DNA of 64,000 nt, taken from Octopus bimaculoides (taxonomy: Eukaryota). Position 1 is the stretch's first letter, and each line of letters begins with the position of its first letter. The stretch spans positions 27,578,357 to 27,642,356 of the forward strand of contig NC_068986.1 in the NCBI RefSeq assembly GCF_001194135.2, in the 5' to 3' direction. This document shows positions 11,533 through 63,154 of the stretch, in pieces. The notes below the pieces were generated by a model. That model saw only the letters and a program-made list of their open reading frames with translations. It had not been told where the DNA came from and ran no database searches. A program made the position numbers and the translations under genes.

Positions 11533-11861
11533 TTCCTGGCACTTGTGCCAGTGGCACTTAAAGAGACATTCGAGCGAGATCATTGCCAGTACCGCTCGAC
11601 TGGCTCCTGTGCAGGTGGCACATAAAATACACCATTTCGAGCGTGGCCGTTACCAGTACTTCCTGACTGGCCTTTGTGCCGGTGGCACGTAAAAACACCC
11701 ACTACACTCTCGGAGTGGTTGGTGTTAGGAAGGGCATCCAGCTGTAGAAACTCTGCCAAATCAGATTGGAGCCTCGTGTAGCCATCTGGTTCACCAGTCC
11801 TCAGTCAAATTGTCCAACCCATGCTAGCATGGAAAGCGGACGTTAAACGATGATGATGATG
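11533..11861 (+). mobile_element. Family B repeat with (GAT)n tail, abutting family A
   Basis: Unit array, GGTTGGTGTTAGGAAGGGCATCCAGCTGTAG, tail GGACGTTAAACGATGATGATGATG. Confidence 0.95.
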
Positions 11862-13732: not shown

Positions 13733-14329
13733 TACATACATATNNNNNNNNNNNNNNNNNNNNNNNNNNNNNNNNNNNNNNNNNNNNNNNNNNNNNNNNN
13801 NNNNNNNNNNNNNNNNNNNNNNNNNNNNNNNNNNNNNNNNNNNNNNNNNNNNNNNNNNNNNNNNNNNNNNNNNNNNNNNNNNNNNNNNNNNNNNNNNNNN
13901 NNNNNNNNNNNNNNNNNNNNNNNNNNNNNNNNNNNNNNNNNNNNNNNNNNNNNNNNNNNNNNNNNNNNNNNNNNNNNNNNNNNNNNNNNNNNNNNNNNNN
14001 NNNNNNNNNNNNNNNNNNNNNNNNNNNNNNNNNNNNNNNNNNNNNNNNNNNNNNNNNNNNNNNNNNNNNNNNNNNNNNNNNNNNNNNNNNNNNNNNNNNN
14101 NNNNNNNNNNNNNNNNNNNNNNNNNNNNNNNNNNNNNNNNNNNNNNNNNNNNNNNNNNNNNNNNNNNNNNNNNNNNNNNNNNNNNNNNNNNNNNNNNNNN
14201 NATATGTGTGTGGTCTTTGTCTTGTGTAGGTGTCTGCGGTGTTTGGTCCTTCTGTTTGTCTTTTGCGTGTGCGTGTGTGTATGTGATATTTGATGATTAT
14301 GTATGCCGTGTTTGGTCCTTATGTTTATC

Positions 14330-14378
<49 letters not shown>

Positions 14379-14684
14379 GTATTTGTTGGAGCAATGGTTG
14401 ATGTTTGTTCTTGGCGGTTTATCAAATACTTTACTGATTGACTTTTTGAATAATGGAATAATATTGGTTAATGATTCCAGTCTGTTGCAGTTCAACATAC
14501 TAGTTCAGTTATTTGTTTATTTTTACCTTCATTTTGATTTTGATTTTGATTTTTCTTTTTTGTCTTTTTTTTTTCTGTTTTCAATTTTTTTTTTTTTTCT
14601 GGACTCAATAATAGCTCTCATCCCCACTCCCATCTTCTCACTCCATCTCAACTGTTTGCTTTACCTCTTCTGTCTTTGACATTA

Positions 14685-14725
<41 letters not shown>

Positions 14726-14988
14726 ACCTCTTTCTTTGTCCACATTCTTGTTTTCCATCTTTTTTTTTTCTGTTCTCTTTCTGTTTGGCTATCTATCTAT
14801 CTGTATTTCTTTCTTTCTTTTCCTCTCTTTATCTCAATCATTCCTCCCCCCCCTCCCTCTTCTTTTGTCTGTTTGTCTTTCCCTAACCCTTTCTTTTTGA
14901 TCTAGGCTTTCTTCTTTGTCATTCTTACTCACCCCCTTTATTTTCATTTCTCATGCTTTCCCTTTCATTAATTGCTCCCCCTCTCCCT

Positions 14989-15029
<41 letters not shown>

Positions 15030-15162
15030 TTACTGATTCTTTCAATGTCTTTTCTCTCTCTTTCATTAATTGTCTCTCACTTTTATTTGTTCTCTCTCTC
15101 TCTCTCTCTCTTCACCCTCTCCAGGCTAACATCATGATATGTGTGTTTTTCTCCATTCACCA

Positions 15163-15204
<42 letters not shown>

Positions 15205-16150
15205 GTCAATGTTTACTGTAAACACTTTATTGTTTACCTAAATGATGCAAAAGCTGGCCCGCCACTGGTGTTCTGAGGTCTTTTAATTATCTCCGCCACT
15301 CTGTTTGGTCTTTGATAAATGGCTATTGAGCTGACTGTTTTATGCTGGAATAATCTAATATTTGACTGGCTTACAAAAACCAGCTCCAGGAACAAGACAC
15401 CCTTGTTGCATCACAGTTTATGCTGGAACTGTTTACAGATTTCTGTTAGTTTAGTGCTTGTTTCAGTGTCGGATTTTTCAAGTTTTTTTTTTCTTCCATT
15501 TATTTCATCCTATTGAATTTTTATGTATTTGTATGTTTGTGTTTGCTTTAATTTGCTATTTGTTTTTCCTGTGTCTGAATTTTTTTCTTTTTTTCTTCTT
15601 TTTTTTTCTTCTTTTAAATACGAATCTAATAAAATTGAATCCAATTTGACTTTTTTATGTTTTTTTTTTCTTGTTTGCTTTTGTTAGTATTACAGTTGTG
15701 GGTATTAGTGTACTAGTTGTTTCCATTGATCATTCACACCGTTAATTTGTATTTTATCTTATTATCACATGATTTTTATATGTGTGCGTGTGTGTCGGGG
15801 GTGTATGTATAATTTCAATATTGCTCTGTTCAGTTGCACCTATTGTTGTCTTTCACCTATTATTCTCTTTTCCAGACTGTCGCTTCCATTCTCTTGTTCT
15901 GTCCACCTGTCTTTCTCGCCATTCCCACCTTACAATTCTATCGTCATGCACCAGCATAACCACACATGCATTCCAAATAGTACTGATACATGTTATTGTC
16001 TACATTCACGCACATATATATATCTTTTCCCTGAACTAATATGAATAATGCTGATCATAATGTTACTGCTTAGACCCAGGGTGGCCCTGAGTAAGCAGGC
16101 CTATGAACAAAAGCATTCCAACGATTTCCATTTCATCCTTTTTCTTCTAG

Positions 16151-16391: not shown

Positions 16392-16790
16392 AGGACCCGA
16401 GTGGGATCACTGCCAGAGCAGTGGCTGCTCTTCTGTGCCGGTGGCACATAAAAAGCACCATTTGAGCGCGATCGTTTCCAGCTTCGCCTTACTGGCTCTT
16501 GTGCCGGTGGCATGTGAACAAAACATTGGACTGACTCCTGTGCAGGTGGCATGTAAAAAAACACCATTTGAGTGTGGCCATTGCCAGTACTGCTGGACTG
16601 GCCCCCTGTGCCGGTGGCACGTAAAAAGCACCCACTACACTCTTGGAGTGGTTGGCATTAGGAAGGGCGTCCAGCTGTAGAAACTCTGCCAGATCAGATT
16701 GGAGTCTGGTGTAGCCATCTGGTTCGCCAGTCCCCAGTCAAATTGTCCAACCCATGCCAGCATGGAAAGTGGACTTTAAATGATGATGAT
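16392..16790 (+). mobile_element. Family B repeat with four TGTGCnGGTGGCA hairpin units
   Basis: Unit array followed by the conserved 3' body and (GAT)n tail. Confidence 0.95.
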
Positions 16791-18309
16791 TAGTCAGTAC
16801 CTGACGTATCTTGAGACAAAAGCAAAATGCTTCTAGACCTCTGCTATCTGATTATGTTTACTACCCAATTAAAAGTTTTTGAAGGTCCAAACAGTTATAA
16901 ACCATAACCAACCCATTACCTCTTCCCCTCTTTCAAGGCAGCCTTAGAAAGTTTATCTACACTATTGTTCTTCTTCAAGCCCTTTGTTATTGGAAGTAAA
17001 TAGCTCTCTGTTGCATACATTGATACTAGTGCTGGATTAACCACGAAGCAAAATAAACGTGCTTAAAGCATCAAGGAAAATGGTAAATGGTTTATGGCAC
17101 AAAAGAAATCACTTTAAACTTGTTAAAATAATATTCAAAGTAGTTTATATGACAGGAAGGATTTATTTTATGATTTATCATTGTCTATATTTTGAATTGC
17201 TTATATTGGAGCACCTAAACCTTTTAAGTGCTTGGAGCCTCTGTGGGTCCTAATCCAGCCAAGATTGATACACTCCATCTACAACACCACCACACCACTA
17301 TTTAGAAATATAAACCTTAGTTAAATGATGATGATGATCATGGTGATTGAACTTTATCTAAATTGGATCTGATGTTTTATAGGTTTTTTTTTAATATTCT
17401 TTCTCTTGGCAAGACCAATATCACTAGTGCCAGTGATATGGGAAAAGCATCCTGTACACTCTGTAAAGTGGTTGTCATTAAGAAGGGCATTCAATCAAAG
17501 AGACCATGCTAACAGTGGAACACTGGTTTCAAATTTTGACACAAAACTGGCAATTTCAGAGGAAGTTCAAGCACAAGACTGGCAAGTTCAATTACATCAA
17601 CCCCAGTGATTAACTGGTACTTATTTTATCAACCCTGAAAGGATGAAAGGCAAAGTCGACCTTGGTGGAATTTGAACTCAGAACATAAAGATAGACAAAA
17701 TGCTTAACTTTGTCTGACATACTAATGATTCTGCTGCTCACCGCCTGGAACATTAAGGCAAGATTTGGTTCTCCAACCCATTGGATCCTGTCTAACTGCC
17801 CAACCCATGCCAGCATTGGAAGCAAATTGTAAAATGACGACAACAATGGTGACAATAATGACTTTATAATGATATTGTCTTTCTCGTAGTTGTTGAAAGG
17901 CAGTTGCCACTTCCAAGGAGGAATATTCTAGTGAAATTTAAACAACAGACACAATAACATCTTGTAGTAACACATGAGTGGTGTTGCAAATTTATCTCCT
18001 GATCTTTCAAAGTGCTTGACTTTTTCCTGTTTCACTCTGAAGGCAGTCCTGTACTTGAGATTTTTCTCATCTTAAGTTTGATACATATCTACAGATGGTT
18101 GTACTATGACAGCATCTTAAAGTTGTGTGTGTGCGTGTGCACATGCACGTGTGTGAGGGAGAGAGAGAGAGACAGAGAGTAAGAAAGAGAAGTATACCAT
18201 TGTTTTTAACAGATGTTATGGTTATTTGGGATATTTACCATTTGCTTGCAGTTTGAATTATTTGTATTAGCAACCACCTGTCTTATCTTGTGTGTATGAA
18301 CATATGTCA

Positions 18310-18719: not shown

Positions 18720-18887
18720 CATCATTATCATTTAATGTTTGTTTTCCATGCTGGCATGAGTTGGACGGTTTGACTGAAAACAGGTAAGCTGGGGAGCTGC
18801 ACCAGGTTCCAGTCTGGTTTGGCAAGGTTTCTATGGCTTGTAGCTCTTGAACCTTTGCCAAATCAGATTGGAACCTGGTGCAGCTTA
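18720..18887 (-). mobile_element. Family B fragment with internal foldback
   Basis: Tail and body on the minus strand; arms 18795-18831 and 18849-18885 are reverse complements. Confidence 0.85.
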
Positions 18888-18949
18888 TCAGTATGTGTGT
18901 ATGTGTGTGTGTGAATGTACGTTAAAATGATGATGATAAATATGTTATA

Positions 18950-19119
18950 TACTACACTCTCTGAGTGGTTGGCATTAGGAAGGGCGTCCAGCTGTAGAAA
19001 CTCTGCCAAATTAGATTGGAGCCTGGTGTTGCCATCCGGTTTCACCAGTCCTCAATCAAATCGTCCAACCCATGCTAGCATGGAAAGCGGACGTTAAACG
19101 ATGATGATGATGATGATGA
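18950..19119 (+). mobile_element. Family B 3' half, young
   Basis: ACTACACTCTCTGAGTGGTTGGCATTAGGAAGGGCGTCC...GGACGTTAAACG(ATG)n. Confidence 0.95.
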
Positions 19120-19128
19120 TATATTTAA

Positions 19129-19242
19129 CTAATTAACATGCTTTTCACACTTGCGTCTCTTTTCTCATTGTAGGTAAGTACATAATTTATGAAAAACCCT
19201 TCTTAAATGTTTCATCATTAAATTTTGGAATATGCGGTAAGT
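19129..19242 (+). other. Putative recursive splice site (3'ss/5'ss tandem) with a 63-nt RS-exon
   Basis: CTAAT branch motif 19129-33, pyrimidine tract, no AG from 19088 to 19171, TAG|GTAAGT at 19173/74, second GCG|GTAAGT at 19236/37. Confidence 0.55.
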
Positions 19243-19514
19243 TTTTAATTTTTACCTAATGCTGTTAAAGTTGTTCCTTAAATAAATGGGAAAAACAAGC
19301 CATGTTTTGGTTTAAAAAGCAATCAGGAAAAAAGGATCAGGGTTCAATACTTGTGACCTTTATAAGATCCTCCAGATGAGGGTGGTTGATACCCAGTACA
19401 CTGCTAGAACATCCCAAGGTCAATGTCTGCAAGAAATATAAAATAAAAAAAAAAGAAAATGGGTGGGGAGCTTGGTATGAAACCAAAGATCTTGTTAAAA
19501 TGTTTTCTATGATT

Positions 19515-19700
19515 AAGGCAGCAAGCTGTCAGAATCCTTAACACCCCAGACAAAATGCTGTCTTAAAATCCTGCCATGGTCAACTTTGCCTTTCACCCTT
19601 TCGGGGTCGATAAAATAAATACCAGTTATTGGGGCTGATGCAATCAAGTATCTCCATCCTCTGAAATTGCTGGCCTTGTGCCAAAATTTGAAACCAAAAT
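19515..19700 (+). mobile_element. Family C SINE
   Basis: AAGCTGTCAGAATCC head, GGTCAACTTTGCCTTTCACCCTTTCGGGGTCGATAAAAT body, GGCCTTGTGCCAAAATTTGAAACC end. Confidence 0.85.
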
Positions 19701-20238
19701 GTTTACAATTCAGAGCACTCTGCTAAAGGCACCCAAGTACCAAGGTACAGATGTACTAAGGTACCTAAGTACAAAGTGGCAGTGTTAAGCCAGGCAATTT
19801 GTTGTGCTTCTTACAACAGTTGTAGAGTCAGAGTTGTTTAGTTGAAATCAGTTAATATGTACCAGTTTTAACACTGACTAAATGTAAATTGTTATATAAT
19901 GCATTAAAGTTTCAAACAATGCTTTAATCTCGAAAAGGAAAGGTTATGTATGTAATTGATTTTTTTTTTTTCAAAATGATCATTTGTTAAGTTGTTTTAG
20001 GTGTTTTGGTCTTTTAGTTATTAGCTTTGATCTTAAGATTTTTTTTTTGTTTGAAGTAGAAAAGAAAGATGTTCTTGATTTTATTCTTTTATACTGTTTT
20101 TCATATTTTGTTTTTTGTTTTCAACTATTCTTTTACTCTATAGCATTTTTTGATAGAAGCAGCCACTTTTTAAAAAATTTTAAAAGTTAAGTTTTATGCT
20201 TAATTTTTTTTTTTGTATCTTCTTTGATAAAGAGAACA

Positions 20239-20280
20239 AATAAAGGGATTCCAATAAAGGGATTCCAATAAAGGGATTCC
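20239..20280. repeat. Perfect 14-bp x3 tandem repeat (AATAAAGGGATTCC)
   Basis: Read directly from the sequence. Confidence 0.98.
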
Positions 20281-20608
20281 ATAGCCATCACTCACAAACT
20301 AGGATAATTTAGTAGTAGCAGGTGCTTGGCTTTTACTGATTGTTTTAGGTGTCTGTGTAATTGTGAGTAAATGTGGACACCTTTTTAGCTTTCTCCTTTT
20401 TTGGGCCCTGTGAAACATGAAAGATGTGATAACTGGCGAGAGAAAGAGAGAGAGAGCAGCAGCAGCAGCTGCTTACATATGGCTGTTACTCACTTTTATC
20501 TGAGTAGACTGGATCAAACATGTAATCAAGTGCCTTGCTCAAGGACACAACGCCTTATGATTAATTGTAAACCCAACAACCCCTAAACACTAAACATGTC
20601 TTCAAAAC

Positions 20609-34189: not shown

Positions 34190-34480
34190 ATTCTGGTGCC
34201 ATGTAGAAAGAACCCTTTTTGGTGCCATCTTAAAAGCACCCTTTCTGGTGCCATGTAAATAGCCCCTGTGCTGGTGCCTCGTATAAAGCGCTGATGTCAC
34301 TTAAAATGCACCTAGTACACTGTAAAGTAGTTGGTATTAGGAAGGGCAGCCAGCCATAGAAACCATGCCAAAACAGACAATTGGAACCTGGTTGGCCAAC
34401 CCTTGGAACCTGGTTGACCAATCAAACTCTCCAACCCATACCAGCATGGAAAATAGACATTAAATGTTGATGATGATGAT
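34190..34480 (+). mobile_element. Family B variant with short ~26-bp TGGTGCC units
   Basis: TGGTGCCAT(G/C)TAnAAAGnACCC-like unit about 4x, then GTTGGTATTAGGAAGGGCAGCC and (GAT)n tail. Confidence 0.85.
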
Positions 34481-37067: not shown

Positions 37068-37258
37068 GGGTGGTGAGCTGGCAGAATCGTTAACATGCTG
37101 GGCAAGATGCTTAATGGTTTTTCATCCACCTTTATACATTCTGAGTTGAAATTCTACTGAGCTTGAATTTGCCTTTCATCCCTTTGATGGGAGGGGGGGC
37201 AATGAAATAAGTACCAGTTGAGAATTGGGGTTGATATAATCGACTTAACCCCTACCCC
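37068..37258 (+). mobile_element. Family C SINE
   Basis: GGTGGTGAGCTGGCAGAATCGTTAAC head, TTCTGAGTTGAAATTC B-box-like motif; further copies at ~45615-45810 and 61235-61513 (expanded (ATT)n tail). Confidence 0.9.
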
Positions 37259-37259
37259 A

Positions 37260-37499
37260 GTGGAAGCGCAATGACCCAGTGGTTTGGGCAGCGGACTCGC
37301 AGTCATAGGATCGCGGTTTCGATTCCCAGACCGGGCGTTGTGAGTGTTTATTGAGCGAAAACACCTAAAGCTCCACGAGGCTCCGGCAAGGGATGGTGGC
37401 GAACCCTGCTGTACTCTTTCACCACAACTTTGTCTCACTCTTTCTTCCTGTTTCTGCTGTGTCTGTAATTCAAAGGGGTCAGCCTTGTCACACTGTGTC
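37260..37499 (+). mobile_element. Family D tRNA-derived SINE, 5' part
   Basis: A box TGACCCAGTGG, B box GGTTTCGATTCC; runs into the gap. Confidence 0.95.
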
Positions 37500-61513: not shown

Positions 61514-62766
61514 NNNNNNNNNNNNNNNNNNNNNNNNNNNNNNNNNNNNNNNNNNNNNNNNNNNNNNNNNNNNNNNNNNNNNNNNNNNNNNNNNNNNNNN
61601 NNNNNNNNNNNNNNNNNNNNNNNNNNNNNNNNNNNNNNNNNNNNNNNNNNNNNNNNNNNNNNNNNNNNNNNNNNNNNNNNNNNNNNNNNNNNNNNNNNNN
61701 NNNNNNNNNNNNNNNNNNNNNNNNNNNNNNNNNNNNNNNNNNNNNNNNNNNNNNNNNNNNNNNNNNNNNNNNNNNNNNNNNNNNNNNNNNNNNNNNNNNN
61801 NNNNNNNNNNNNNNNNNNNNNNNNNNNNNNNNNNNNNNNNNNNNNNNNNNNNNNNNNNNNNNNNNNNNNNNNNNNNNNNNNNNNNNNNNNNNNNNNNNNN
61901 NNNNNNNNNNNNNNNNNNNNNNNNNNNNNNNNNNNNNNNNNNNNNNNNNNNNNNNNNNNNNNNNNNNNNNNNNNNNNNNNNNNNNNNNNNNNNNNNNNNN
62001 NNNNNNNNNNNNNNNNNNNNNNNNNNNNNNNNNNNNNNNNNNNGGGGGGGGGGGTGAGATAAAAAACAAGAGGACCCGAAACCAACAGGATTGCGAAACG
62101 TACTTGACATCCGCATCAACAATGGCTGTAGCTTTTGAAATATTTCTGGGATTCAAAACAGACGAAGCAAATTAAAATTTGGTTTGTTTACTGGAATCGA
62201 ACCTAATCCACTCTTGGTGGATTAGGAAGATGGTGCTGGTGATGGTGGTGTTGATAGTGGATGTAGTGGCGTCTAACTTCGACACGCTCATGGATTTCGT
62301 CTTGGCTGACGGAATGGCAGGCACCCCAGTACCTCCTGGTACTTATTTTACCGAATCTCCATTTTGGATGACATAAAAATCGCTCTGGTTGGAATTGAAC
62401 ACAGAATGGGCTAGGTCAGAACTAACCATTACAGGACAGTATGCCCATCCATTATCCCTTCTGTTTCATTGTTGCTTTTGTGGTGGTGATGATGATGATG
62501 TTGTTAATGGTAATGATGTTCTTTTCTTGGCTGAACACTAGAGGGGTGAGGTATGCCTTATAAATGTTTGAATTGGAATGTGGAGGTATTTTGCGATGGA
62601 CTAGCGTATCGTCCAGTGGCAGAGCTAGGGTTTGTTTCACATCAACTGTTACACTACGGACACTGAGAATTATAAATGCCATTGAGGGGTGGGGAAGGAA
62701 GACTCCAGAATTTGAACTCCTATACCCTGGAGTACCAAACTACATATCACAATGAAGTTCCATTTT

Positions 62767-63154
62767 TGTTGTTGGCACTCCGTCGATTACGACGTCGAGG
62801 GTTCCAGTTGATCCGATCAACGGAACAGCCTGCTCGTGAAATTAACGTGCAAGTGGCTGAGCATTCCACAGACACGTGTACCCTTAACATAGTTCTCGGA
62901 GATATTCAGTGTGACACAGAGTGTGACAAGGCTGACCCTTTTGAATTACAGGTACAACAGAAACAGGAAGTAAGAGTGAGAGAAAGTTGTGGTGAAAGAG
63001 TACAGCAGGGTTCGCCACCATCTCCTGCCGGAGCCTCGTGGAGCTTTAGGTGTTTTCTCTCAATAAACACTCACAACGCCCGGTCTAGGAATCGAAACCG
63101 CGATCCTATGACCGCGAATCTGCTGCCCTAACCACTGGGTCATTGCGCCTCCAC
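62767..63154 (-). mobile_element. Family D SINE, full length (388 bp), tRNA-Arg-like head, (CAA)n tail
   Basis: A box TGACCCAGTGG and B box GGTTTCGATTCC on the minus strand; TSD-like flanks TCCATTTT (62759-66) and TCCATATT (63155-62). Confidence 0.95.

What the first reader, a model, noticed from the sequence alone, without database searches (positions are those of the whole stretch)
19120..19242. Recursive-splice-site ('ratchet point') with a frame-preserving 63-nt RS-exon: possible recursive splicing in cephalopod giant introns
Seen: CTAAT branch motif (19129-33), about 85 nt with no AG, a pyrimidine tract, TTGTAG immediately followed by the perfect donor GTAAGT (junction 19173/74), and a second perfect GTAAGT exactly 63 nt later (19236/37). 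Established: this tandem 3'ss/5'ss plus a short cryptic exon closed by a downstream 5'ss is the architecture of recursive splice sites in Drosophila and vertebrate long introns. The 63-nt segment is a multiple of 3, open in one phase ([G]KYIIYEKPFLNVSSLNFGIC) and has TAA stops in the other two, so it could act as a zero-length exon, a coding micro-exon or a poison exon. Inference: I know of no description of recursive splicing in molluscs.
Basis: partly seen in the sequence, partly recalled or inferred. Interest (0 to 1): 0.8.

Follow-up and report, generated by a model that had tools for sequence, protein, structure and literature searches.

The report
Recursive-splice-like motif, function untested
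The sequence really does look like a textbook recursive splice site, but it lies in repeat-rich DNA with no detectable gene, dozens of equally good matches are expected by chance in a genome this size, and nothing available here can show that it is ever used.

Summary
CTAAT is at 19129-33, the AG-free stretch is 84 nt, TTGTAG|GTAAGT meets at 19173/74, and a second GTAAGT follows 63 nt later. The 63-nt segment has one open phase.

The bare 9-mer YAGGTAAGT is at chance level: 1 seen, 1.16 expected. The full composite (strong acceptor context plus a second donor) is uncommon, at about 1e-3 per 64-kb window. That still means roughly 30 chance copies in a 2.7-Gb genome, and about 500 without the second donor.

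The site sits in a 440-bp single-copy island between dispersed repeats. A SINE ends 9 nt before the proposed branch point, and its (GAT)7 tail supplies 33 of the 84 AG-free bases.

I found no exon, Pfam domain, protein homologue, tRNA or Rfam family anywhere in the window. Whether the + strand is an intron is therefore unknown.

No reachable collection holds DNA or RNA of this organism, and positive controls with the window's own repeats also failed. Conservation and transcript use could not be tested.

My best reading is a chance splice-site-like juxtaposition in unconstrained DNA (about 0.6). A genuine recursive site or RS-exon remains possible (about 0.15). Interest is low until RNA-seq or comparative data exist.

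The parts
18951..19120 (+). Dispersed SINE copy, + orientation, ending in (GAT)7 at 19100-19120. It abuts the candidate site.
   Evidence: BLAST and alignment against other copies in the window: 93% identical to 11701-11861, 90% to 16634-16790, 86% to 48610-48444. The flanks diverge right after the GAT tail.
19088..19171 (+). AG-free tract of 84 nt. Positions 19088-19120 (33 nt) are SINE 3' end and (GAT)n tail, which cannot contain AG.
   Evidence: Only 1.8% of AG sites in the window have an AG-free tract this long.
19129..19133 (+). CTAAT, a possible branch-point motif with the A at 19132, 41 nt before the end of the AG. TTAAC at 19134-38 is an alternative.
   Evidence: Read from the sequence. 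CTRAY occurs 15-50 nt upstream of 16% of acceptor-like AG sites in the window, and YTNAY upstream of 63%. Not tested functionally.
19151..19170 (+). Pyrimidine tract TTGCGTCTCTTTTCTCATTG (80% Y). TT is present at -5/-6.
   Evidence: for the tract, for the 11-nt longest pyrimidine run. The TT rule for Drosophila ratchet points is from 10.1101/006163.
19171..19179 (+). TAG|GTAAGT: juxtaposed acceptor and donor consensus, junction at 19173/19174. This is the putative ratchet point.
   Evidence: It is the only YAGGTAAGT in the window, against 1.16 expected. It is the best of 5 relaxed AG|GTRAG[TA] sites on both strands.
19174..19236 (+). 63-nt segment between the two donors, the putative RS-exon. 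One open phase gives KYIIYEKPFLNVSSLNFGIC.
   Evidence: No protein homologue and no Pfam family. 72% of random 63-mers from the window have an open phase.
19237..19242 (+). Second GTAAGT, preceded by GCG. This is the putative RS-exon donor.
   Evidence: The chance that GTAAGT falls 20-120 nt after an AG is 2.3%.
19563..19696 (.). Copy of a second dispersed repeat that closes the single-copy island 19121-19562. An inverted, 73% identical copy lies at 17524-17676, and other copies lie elsewhere in the window.

Best explanation
The site is a chance juxtaposition of splice-site-like words in unconstrained, repeat-rich, AT-rich non-coding DNA. It lies in a 440-bp single-copy island between SINE-type insertions.

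Shown: a strong acceptor-like tract happens to be followed by GTAAGT, and a second GTAAGT lies 63 nt further on. No gene, exon or conserved element was found around it.

Inferred: the site has no dedicated function.

Conditional prediction: if this stretch is transcribed on the + strand inside an intron, the spliceosome would probably define 19174-19236 as a cryptic exon at some level. Because the exon starts with GTAAGT, it could then be removed again. That would be recursive-type behaviour as a by-product, not evidence of a selected ratchet point.
For: - The core 9-mer is at chance: 1 seen against 1.16 expected. GTAAGT itself is not enriched: 33 against 36.5, with 13 on + and 20 on -.
- Block shuffles reproduce the acceptor-like version at 0.0087 per window and the version with a second donor at 7.5e-4 per window. 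The factorised estimates are 0.011 and 6e-4, which give about 500 and about 30 chance copies per 2.7 Gb.
- 33 of the 84 AG-free bases are a SINE tail.
- The neighbourhood is nested SINE fragments, microsatellites and assembly gaps.
- No Pfam domain in ORFs of 40 aa or more across about 14-24 kb.
- No protein homologue for ORFs around the site, or for all single-copy ORFs of 44 aa or more in the window.
- No tRNA and no Rfam family.
- The open phase and the length divisible by three are uninformative.
- Cryptic RS-exons in flies are usually out of frame (PMC8605326), so the frame-preserving feature does not point to that class.
Against: - The full composite is uncommon per window (about 1e-3; about 1e-4 with thresholds at the observed values).
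- This is the best AG|GT site in the window on every measure.
- It also has TT at -5/-6 and a CTAAT at branch-point distance, as real ratchet points do.
- If cephalopods had several hundred true sites of this strength, true sites would be about as frequent as chance ones.
- The negative gene searches are weak. The positive controls made from the window's own repeat ORFs also found nothing, and exons under 44 aa were not searched.
Confidence: 0.6

Rival explanations
1. It is a genuine intronic recursive splice site (ratchet point) with a cryptic RS-exon. The window would be part of a long + strand intron. U2AF and U2 would recognise the 19129-19173 branch point, tract and AG, and exon definition would use the 19237 donor. 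The upstream exon would be joined at 19174, and the regenerated GTAAGT would then remove the rest of the intron, usually skipping the 63 nt.
For: The architecture matches published ratchet points: strong tract, TT at -5/-6, AG|GTAAGT, and a downstream donor about 50 nt away (10.1101/006163, PMC8605326). The composite is rare by chance per window. No exon was detected in 64 kb, which is compatible with a giant intron.
Against: There is no evidence that the + strand is transcribed or intronic. Conservation is untested. Chance sites outnumber or match any plausible number of real ones genome-wide. In O. vulgaris the median intron is about 2.5 kb and there are about 8 genes per Mb (PMC10700109), so my own estimate of the prior for lying in a sense-strand giant intron is well under 0.2. 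Both donors are GTAAGT, so nothing predicts that the first one wins. Recursive splicing has not been described in any mollusc.
Confidence: 0.15
2. It is an ordinary cryptic or alternative cassette exon (pseudo-exon, micro-exon or poison exon) of 63 nt. It would be used at low or tissue-specific level through acceptor 19173 and donor 19236, and its leading GTAAGT would be incidental.
For: The segment has a good acceptor and a perfect donor 63 nt apart. Its length preserves the reading frame, and it has one stop-free phase.
Against: The peptide has no homologue and an AT-driven composition. 72% of random 63-mers from the window are open in some phase. The same lack of any gene context applies.
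Confidence: 0.1
3. The two GTAAGT words act only as U1 snRNP binding sites or decoy donors within a long transcript, for example protecting against premature cleavage. There would be no splicing at 19173.
For: Two perfect U1-complementary hexamers lie 63 nt apart on one strand.
Against: GTAAGT is not enriched in the window or on the + strand (33 against 36.5 expected; 13 on + and 20 on -). Nothing specific supports this reading.
Confidence: 0.05

Closest known systems
Drosophila intronic ratchet points with cryptic RS-exons (Ubx, kuz, Bx, luna; Duff et al. 2015 preprint 10.1101/006163; Joseph et al., PMC8605326)
   Same: Juxtaposed acceptor|donor with a prominent pyrimidine tract, TT at -5/-6, GTAAGT immediately after AG, and a short downstream segment (about 50 nt in flies, 63 nt here) closed by another donor.
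   Different: Fly sites are defined by junction reads, saw-tooth coverage, lariats and very high conservation of the AG|GT core inside introns of 11 kb or more. None of that is known here. Fly cryptic RS-exons are usually out of frame, whereas this one preserves the frame. The organism is a presumed cephalopod, where the process has not been described.
Vertebrate RS-exons in long neuronal genes (Sibley et al. 2015, as summarised in PMC5126111; EJC-repressed RS-exons, PMC6224609)
   Same: A YAG|GT site followed by a competing downstream donor. Whether the short exon is included or skipped is decided by competition between the two donors. Included exons often act as poison exons.
   Different: The vertebrate cases were found from RNA data and are more conserved than their flanks. 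Here there is sequence only. This segment has a stop-free phase, so it would not necessarily be a poison exon.
Expressed RS-exons / micro-exons such as Ubx mI and mII (51 nt, frame preserving; PMC8605326)
   Same: A short, frame-preserving exon that begins with a consensus donor.
   Different: Ubx micro-exons are deeply conserved coding sequence. The 63-nt segment here has no homologue and has the composition of random AT-rich DNA.
Pseudo-exons and chance splice-site pairs in long introns (e.g. DMD pseudo-exons, PMC7175933)
   Same: Good acceptor and donor consensus a short distance apart in repeat-rich non-coding DNA, normally silent or used as splicing noise.
   Different: The extra donor directly at the acceptor is what makes this one look recursive.

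Membership tests
Recursive splice site / ratchet point (fly type) | [quoted passage not shown] | tested here: met
   TTGCGTCTCTTTTCTCATTGTAG|GTAAGT: 80% pyrimidines, 11-nt pyrimidine run, 84-nt AG-free zone.
Recursive splice site / ratchet point (fly type) | TT at positions -5 and -6 (99.5% of fly ratchet points, 44% of all fly introns) | tested here: met
   The bases ...CATTGTAG| have T at -5 and at -6. The rule is from 10.1101/006163. It is a fly-specific statistic of unknown relevance to molluscs.
Recursive splice site / ratchet point (fly type) | Short cryptic RS-exon closed by a downstream donor, needed for exon definition | tested here: met
   GTAAGT at 19237-42 lies 63 nt downstream. 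About 50 nt is typical in flies (PMC8605326).
Recursive splice site / ratchet point (fly type) | Lies on the sense strand of a long intron (11 kb or more in flies) of an expressed gene | tested here: inconclusive
   No exon, Pfam domain or protein homologue in the window. Look-ups of two neighbouring ORFs found no contig. The positive controls failed as well, so the gene context is simply unknown.
Recursive splice site / ratchet point (fly type) | Conservation of the AG|GT core and tract above the flanks in related species | not testable with these tools
   No sequence of this organism or its relatives is in the reachable collections. Scans for the site pattern and for the SINE core both returned 0, and the protein searches were empty.
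Recursive splice site / ratchet point (fly type) | RNA evidence: exon-to-ratchet-point junction reads, saw-tooth intronic coverage, recursive lariats | not testable with these tools
   No RNA-seq access.
Cryptic (always skipped) RS-exon | The ratchet-point donor outcompetes the RS-exon donor. The exon is usually out of frame or carries a stop codon. | tested here: not met
   Both donors are GTAAGT (GTAAGTAC against GCG|GTAAGTTT), so no clear winner can be predicted. The segment is 63 nt with one stop-free phase. These are tendencies rather than strict requirements (PMC8605326).
Expressed coding RS-exon / micro-exon | Conserved coding sequence that preserves the reading frame | tested here: inconclusive
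   The frame is preserved and one phase is open. However, there is no homologue, 72% of random 63-mers are open in some phase, and conservation could not be tested.

The most novel reading that the evidence does not exclude
The site is a working recursive splice site, with a frame-preserving 63-nt RS-exon, in a giant intron of a cephalopod gene. That would be the first recursive splicing event shown in a mollusc or any spiralian. It would imply that the fly and vertebrate mechanism is also used for the long introns of the large cephalopod genomes.
Probability: 0.12. Interest if true: 0.55.

Novelty: not a real feature. Interest (0 to 1): 0.15.

Why it matters
If it were real, it would extend recursive splicing from insects and vertebrates to a third, independently large-genomed and large-brained lineage. 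It would also offer a concrete locus for studying how cephalopods remove very long introns. That would be a modest but genuine advance, because the mechanism is already regarded as general to metazoan spliceosomes.

As it stands, the finding is one consensus match with no gene context. Its main value is as a reminder that a genome-wide, strand-aware count of such motifs in annotated cephalopod long introns, checked against total RNA-seq, is the experiment worth doing. This single site is not.

Tried and rejected
1. Finding the host gene.
- I extracted stop-to-stop ORFs in six frames and masked window-internal repeats and low complexity.
- A Pfam scan of the ORFs of 40 aa or more across about 14-24 kb found no family.
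- Two concatenated protein searches covered all single-copy ORFs of 55 aa or more and then 44-54 aa. Neither found a hit.

2. Finding transcripts or orthologues through predicted proteins.
- ORFs around 19137-20583 found no hit.
- Exact look-ups of two neighbouring ORFs found nothing on record.

3. Positive control.
- Four repeat-derived ORFs from the window were added to the query and also found nothing. The protein collection is therefore blind to this organism's non-genic ORFs, and the negative results above are weak.

4. Metagenome scans.
- A scan for the site itself returned 0.
- A scan for the conserved SINE core, used as a control, also returned 0. That collection holds no DNA of this organism.

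5. Rfam and tRNA scans of the whole window found nothing.

6. A literature search for the SINE sequence, to name the organism, returned 0 papers. The 2015 octopus genome paper is not held.

7. Readings I considered and rejected.
- The site is part of the SINE. The alignment shows the repeat ends at the (GAT)n tail, at 19120.
- The inverted repeats at 17524-17681 and 19558-19696 are the ends of one transposon carrying the site. The same repeat occurs singly elsewhere and the two copies are only 73% identical.
- A real exon ends at 19173. The frame is open only from 19137, and the sequence upstream is SINE.

8. Strand-asymmetry hints were too weak to indicate a transcribed strand: AATAAA 67 on + against 86 on -, GTAAGT 13 against 20, and a T excess over A on +.

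Full report
**Observation**

Reading 18800-19600 and checking it by script confirms every coordinate in the finding.
- CTAAT is at 19129-33.
- The last upstream AG ends at 19087, which leaves 84 AG-free bases (19088-19171).
- TTGCGTCTCTTTTCTCATTG (19151-70) is 80% pyrimidine.
- TTGTAG (19168-73) is followed directly by GTAAGT (19174-79).
- A second GTAAGT is at 19237-42, so the enclosed segment is 63 nt.
- One phase of the segment is open (KYIIYEKPFLNVSSLNFGIC). The other two each contain TAA.
- T is present at both -5 and -6, which 99.5% of Drosophila ratchet points share (10.1101/006163).

**Is it more than chance?**

The bare word YAGGTAAGT occurs once in the window, against 1.16 expected from dinucleotide shuffles. 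GTAAGT occurs 33 times against 36.5 expected. So the core is at chance.

The context is better than average. Of five relaxed AG|GTRAG[TA] sites on both strands, this one is best on every measure.

Among 6305 usable AG sites in the window:
- 1.8% have an AG-free tract of 84 nt or more;
- 1.6% have 80% or more pyrimidines;
- 2.3% have GTAAGT 20-120 nt downstream, and 5.7% have GTRAGT.

Multiplying real acceptor-like contexts by word frequencies gives three rates per window:
- 0.011 for acceptor-like YAG|GTAAGT;
- 6e-4 with a second GTRAGT;
- 6e-5 with thresholds set at the observed values.

A direct test with 12,000 shuffles inside 100-nt blocks gave 0.0087, 7.5e-4 and 1.7e-4.

The composite is therefore unusual for a single window. 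It still corresponds to roughly 500, 30 and 3-7 chance copies in a 2.7-Gb genome.

The coding-looking features add nothing. 72% of random 63-mers from this window have an open phase, and divisibility by three has a prior of one third.

**Surroundings**

The window is 9.4% N in 19 gaps, about 35% G+C, and dense in microsatellites and dispersed repeats.

A SINE copy in + orientation occupies 18951-19120 and ends in (GAT)7.
- It is 93% identical to the copy at 11701-11861.
- The alignment with five other copies shows that similarity stops at the tail.
- The candidate site is therefore not part of the SINE. However, the SINE ends 9 nt before the proposed branch point and supplies 33 of the 84 AG-free bases.

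Further upstream are a SINE-fragment hairpin (18795-18885) and TG/TA microsatellites.

Downstream, a second dispersed repeat starts at 19563. It has an old inverted copy at 17524-17676, but it also occurs singly elsewhere, so the pair does not delimit one element.

The candidate thus sits in a 440-bp single-copy island (19121-19562).

**Gene context**

- No tRNA and no Rfam family anywhere in the window.
- ORFs of 40 aa or more between about 14 and 24 kb match no Pfam family.
- Three searches of the 5.8-billion-protein collection found nothing. They covered ORFs around the site, all single-copy ORFs of 55 aa or more, and ORFs of 44-54 aa.
- Four repeat-derived ORFs added to the last query as positive controls also found nothing. 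The collection evidently does not hold non-genic ORFs of this organism, so these negatives are weak.
- Exons shorter than 44 aa were not covered.
- Exact look-ups of two ORFs next to the site found no contig.
- A metagenome scan for the site returned nothing. A control scan for the SINE core also returned nothing, so that collection has no DNA of this organism.

In short, I cannot say whether the + strand is transcribed, whether the window is an intron, or whether the site is conserved.

**Comparison with known systems**

Published fly ratchet points have these properties (10.1101/006163; PMC8605326; PMC6110457):
- a very strong acceptor fused to a donor;
- a cryptic RS-exon of about 50 nt;
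- location in introns of 11 kb or more;
- very high conservation of the AG|GT core;
- RS-exons that are poorly conserved and usually out of frame.

Vertebrate RS-exons work by competition between the regenerated donor and the downstream donor (PMC5126111; PMC6224609).

The sequence features here are met. The defining functional and evolutionary features are untested. The frame-preserving length fits expressed RS-exons such as Ubx mI and mII better than cryptic ones, but there is no sign of coding conservation.

No paper in the held library describes recursive splicing in cephalopods, molluscs or other spiralians.

**Weighing**

In O. vulgaris the median intron is about 2.5 kb and gene density is about 8 per Mb (PMC10700109). 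Introns and intergenic DNA are roughly equal across animal genomes (PMC5534336). From these I estimate the prior that a random base lies in a sense-strand long intron to be well under 0.2.

Chance copies of the motif (tens to hundreds per genome) are at least as numerous as any plausible number of real sites.

Against that, the composite is rare per window. If it were transcribed, it would very probably be seen by the spliceosome.

My estimates are:
- chance juxtaposition without dedicated function, 0.6;
- genuine recursive site, 0.15;
- plain cryptic or alternative exon, 0.1;
- other readings, the remainder.

**Verdict**

Interest is low until annotation, RNA-seq or comparative data are consulted. 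The decisive checks are listed under next steps.

Noticed in passing
window 11701-11861, 16634-16790, 18951-19120, 34326-34480, 43939-44097 (+); 48610-48444, 16313-16151, 18833-18718 (-): One SINE family of about 170 bp with a (GAT)n tail is scattered through the window in both orientations at 70-93% identity. No tRNA-like head was detected by ARAGORN or Rfam. From memory it resembles the abundant octopus SINE, but I could not confirm the organism.
   Followed up: partly
window 18795-18885: A near-perfect hairpin with 44-nt arms, 84% complementary, and a 3-nt loop. It is built from an inverted duplication of a SINE fragment and lies about 300 nt upstream of the site.
   Followed up: no
window 62676-63131 (+), 37154-37499 (-), 46168-46259 (+): A second repeat carries a 151-aa ORF (MPLRGGEGRLQNL...). 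Related copies end at assembly gaps. It has no homologue in the protein collection, so its nature is unknown.
   Followed up: partly
window, 19 N runs (e.g. 13744-14201, 37500-38211, 50547-51467): Gap density is one per 3.4 kb. This equals the contig density of the chromosome-scale O. bimaculoides assembly (713,915 contigs in 2342.5 Mb; PMC10700109). It suggests, but does not prove, that assembly as the source.
   Followed up: partly
window 14001-16000: Strong strand asymmetry (AT skew -0.48, GC skew -0.22): a pyrimidine-rich + strand made of CT/TC/TG microsatellites and T-rich 20-mers.
   Followed up: partly
window 20239-20281: A perfect 14-nt tandem repeat, AATAAAGGGATTCC, in 3.1 copies.
   Followed up: no
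window 47940-47970: Two donor-like AG|GTRAG motifs face each other on opposite strands 11 nt apart (CTTACCTGGAAACAGGTGAG), near other dispersed-repeat copies. This is another example of splice-site-like words arising in repeats.
   Followed up: no
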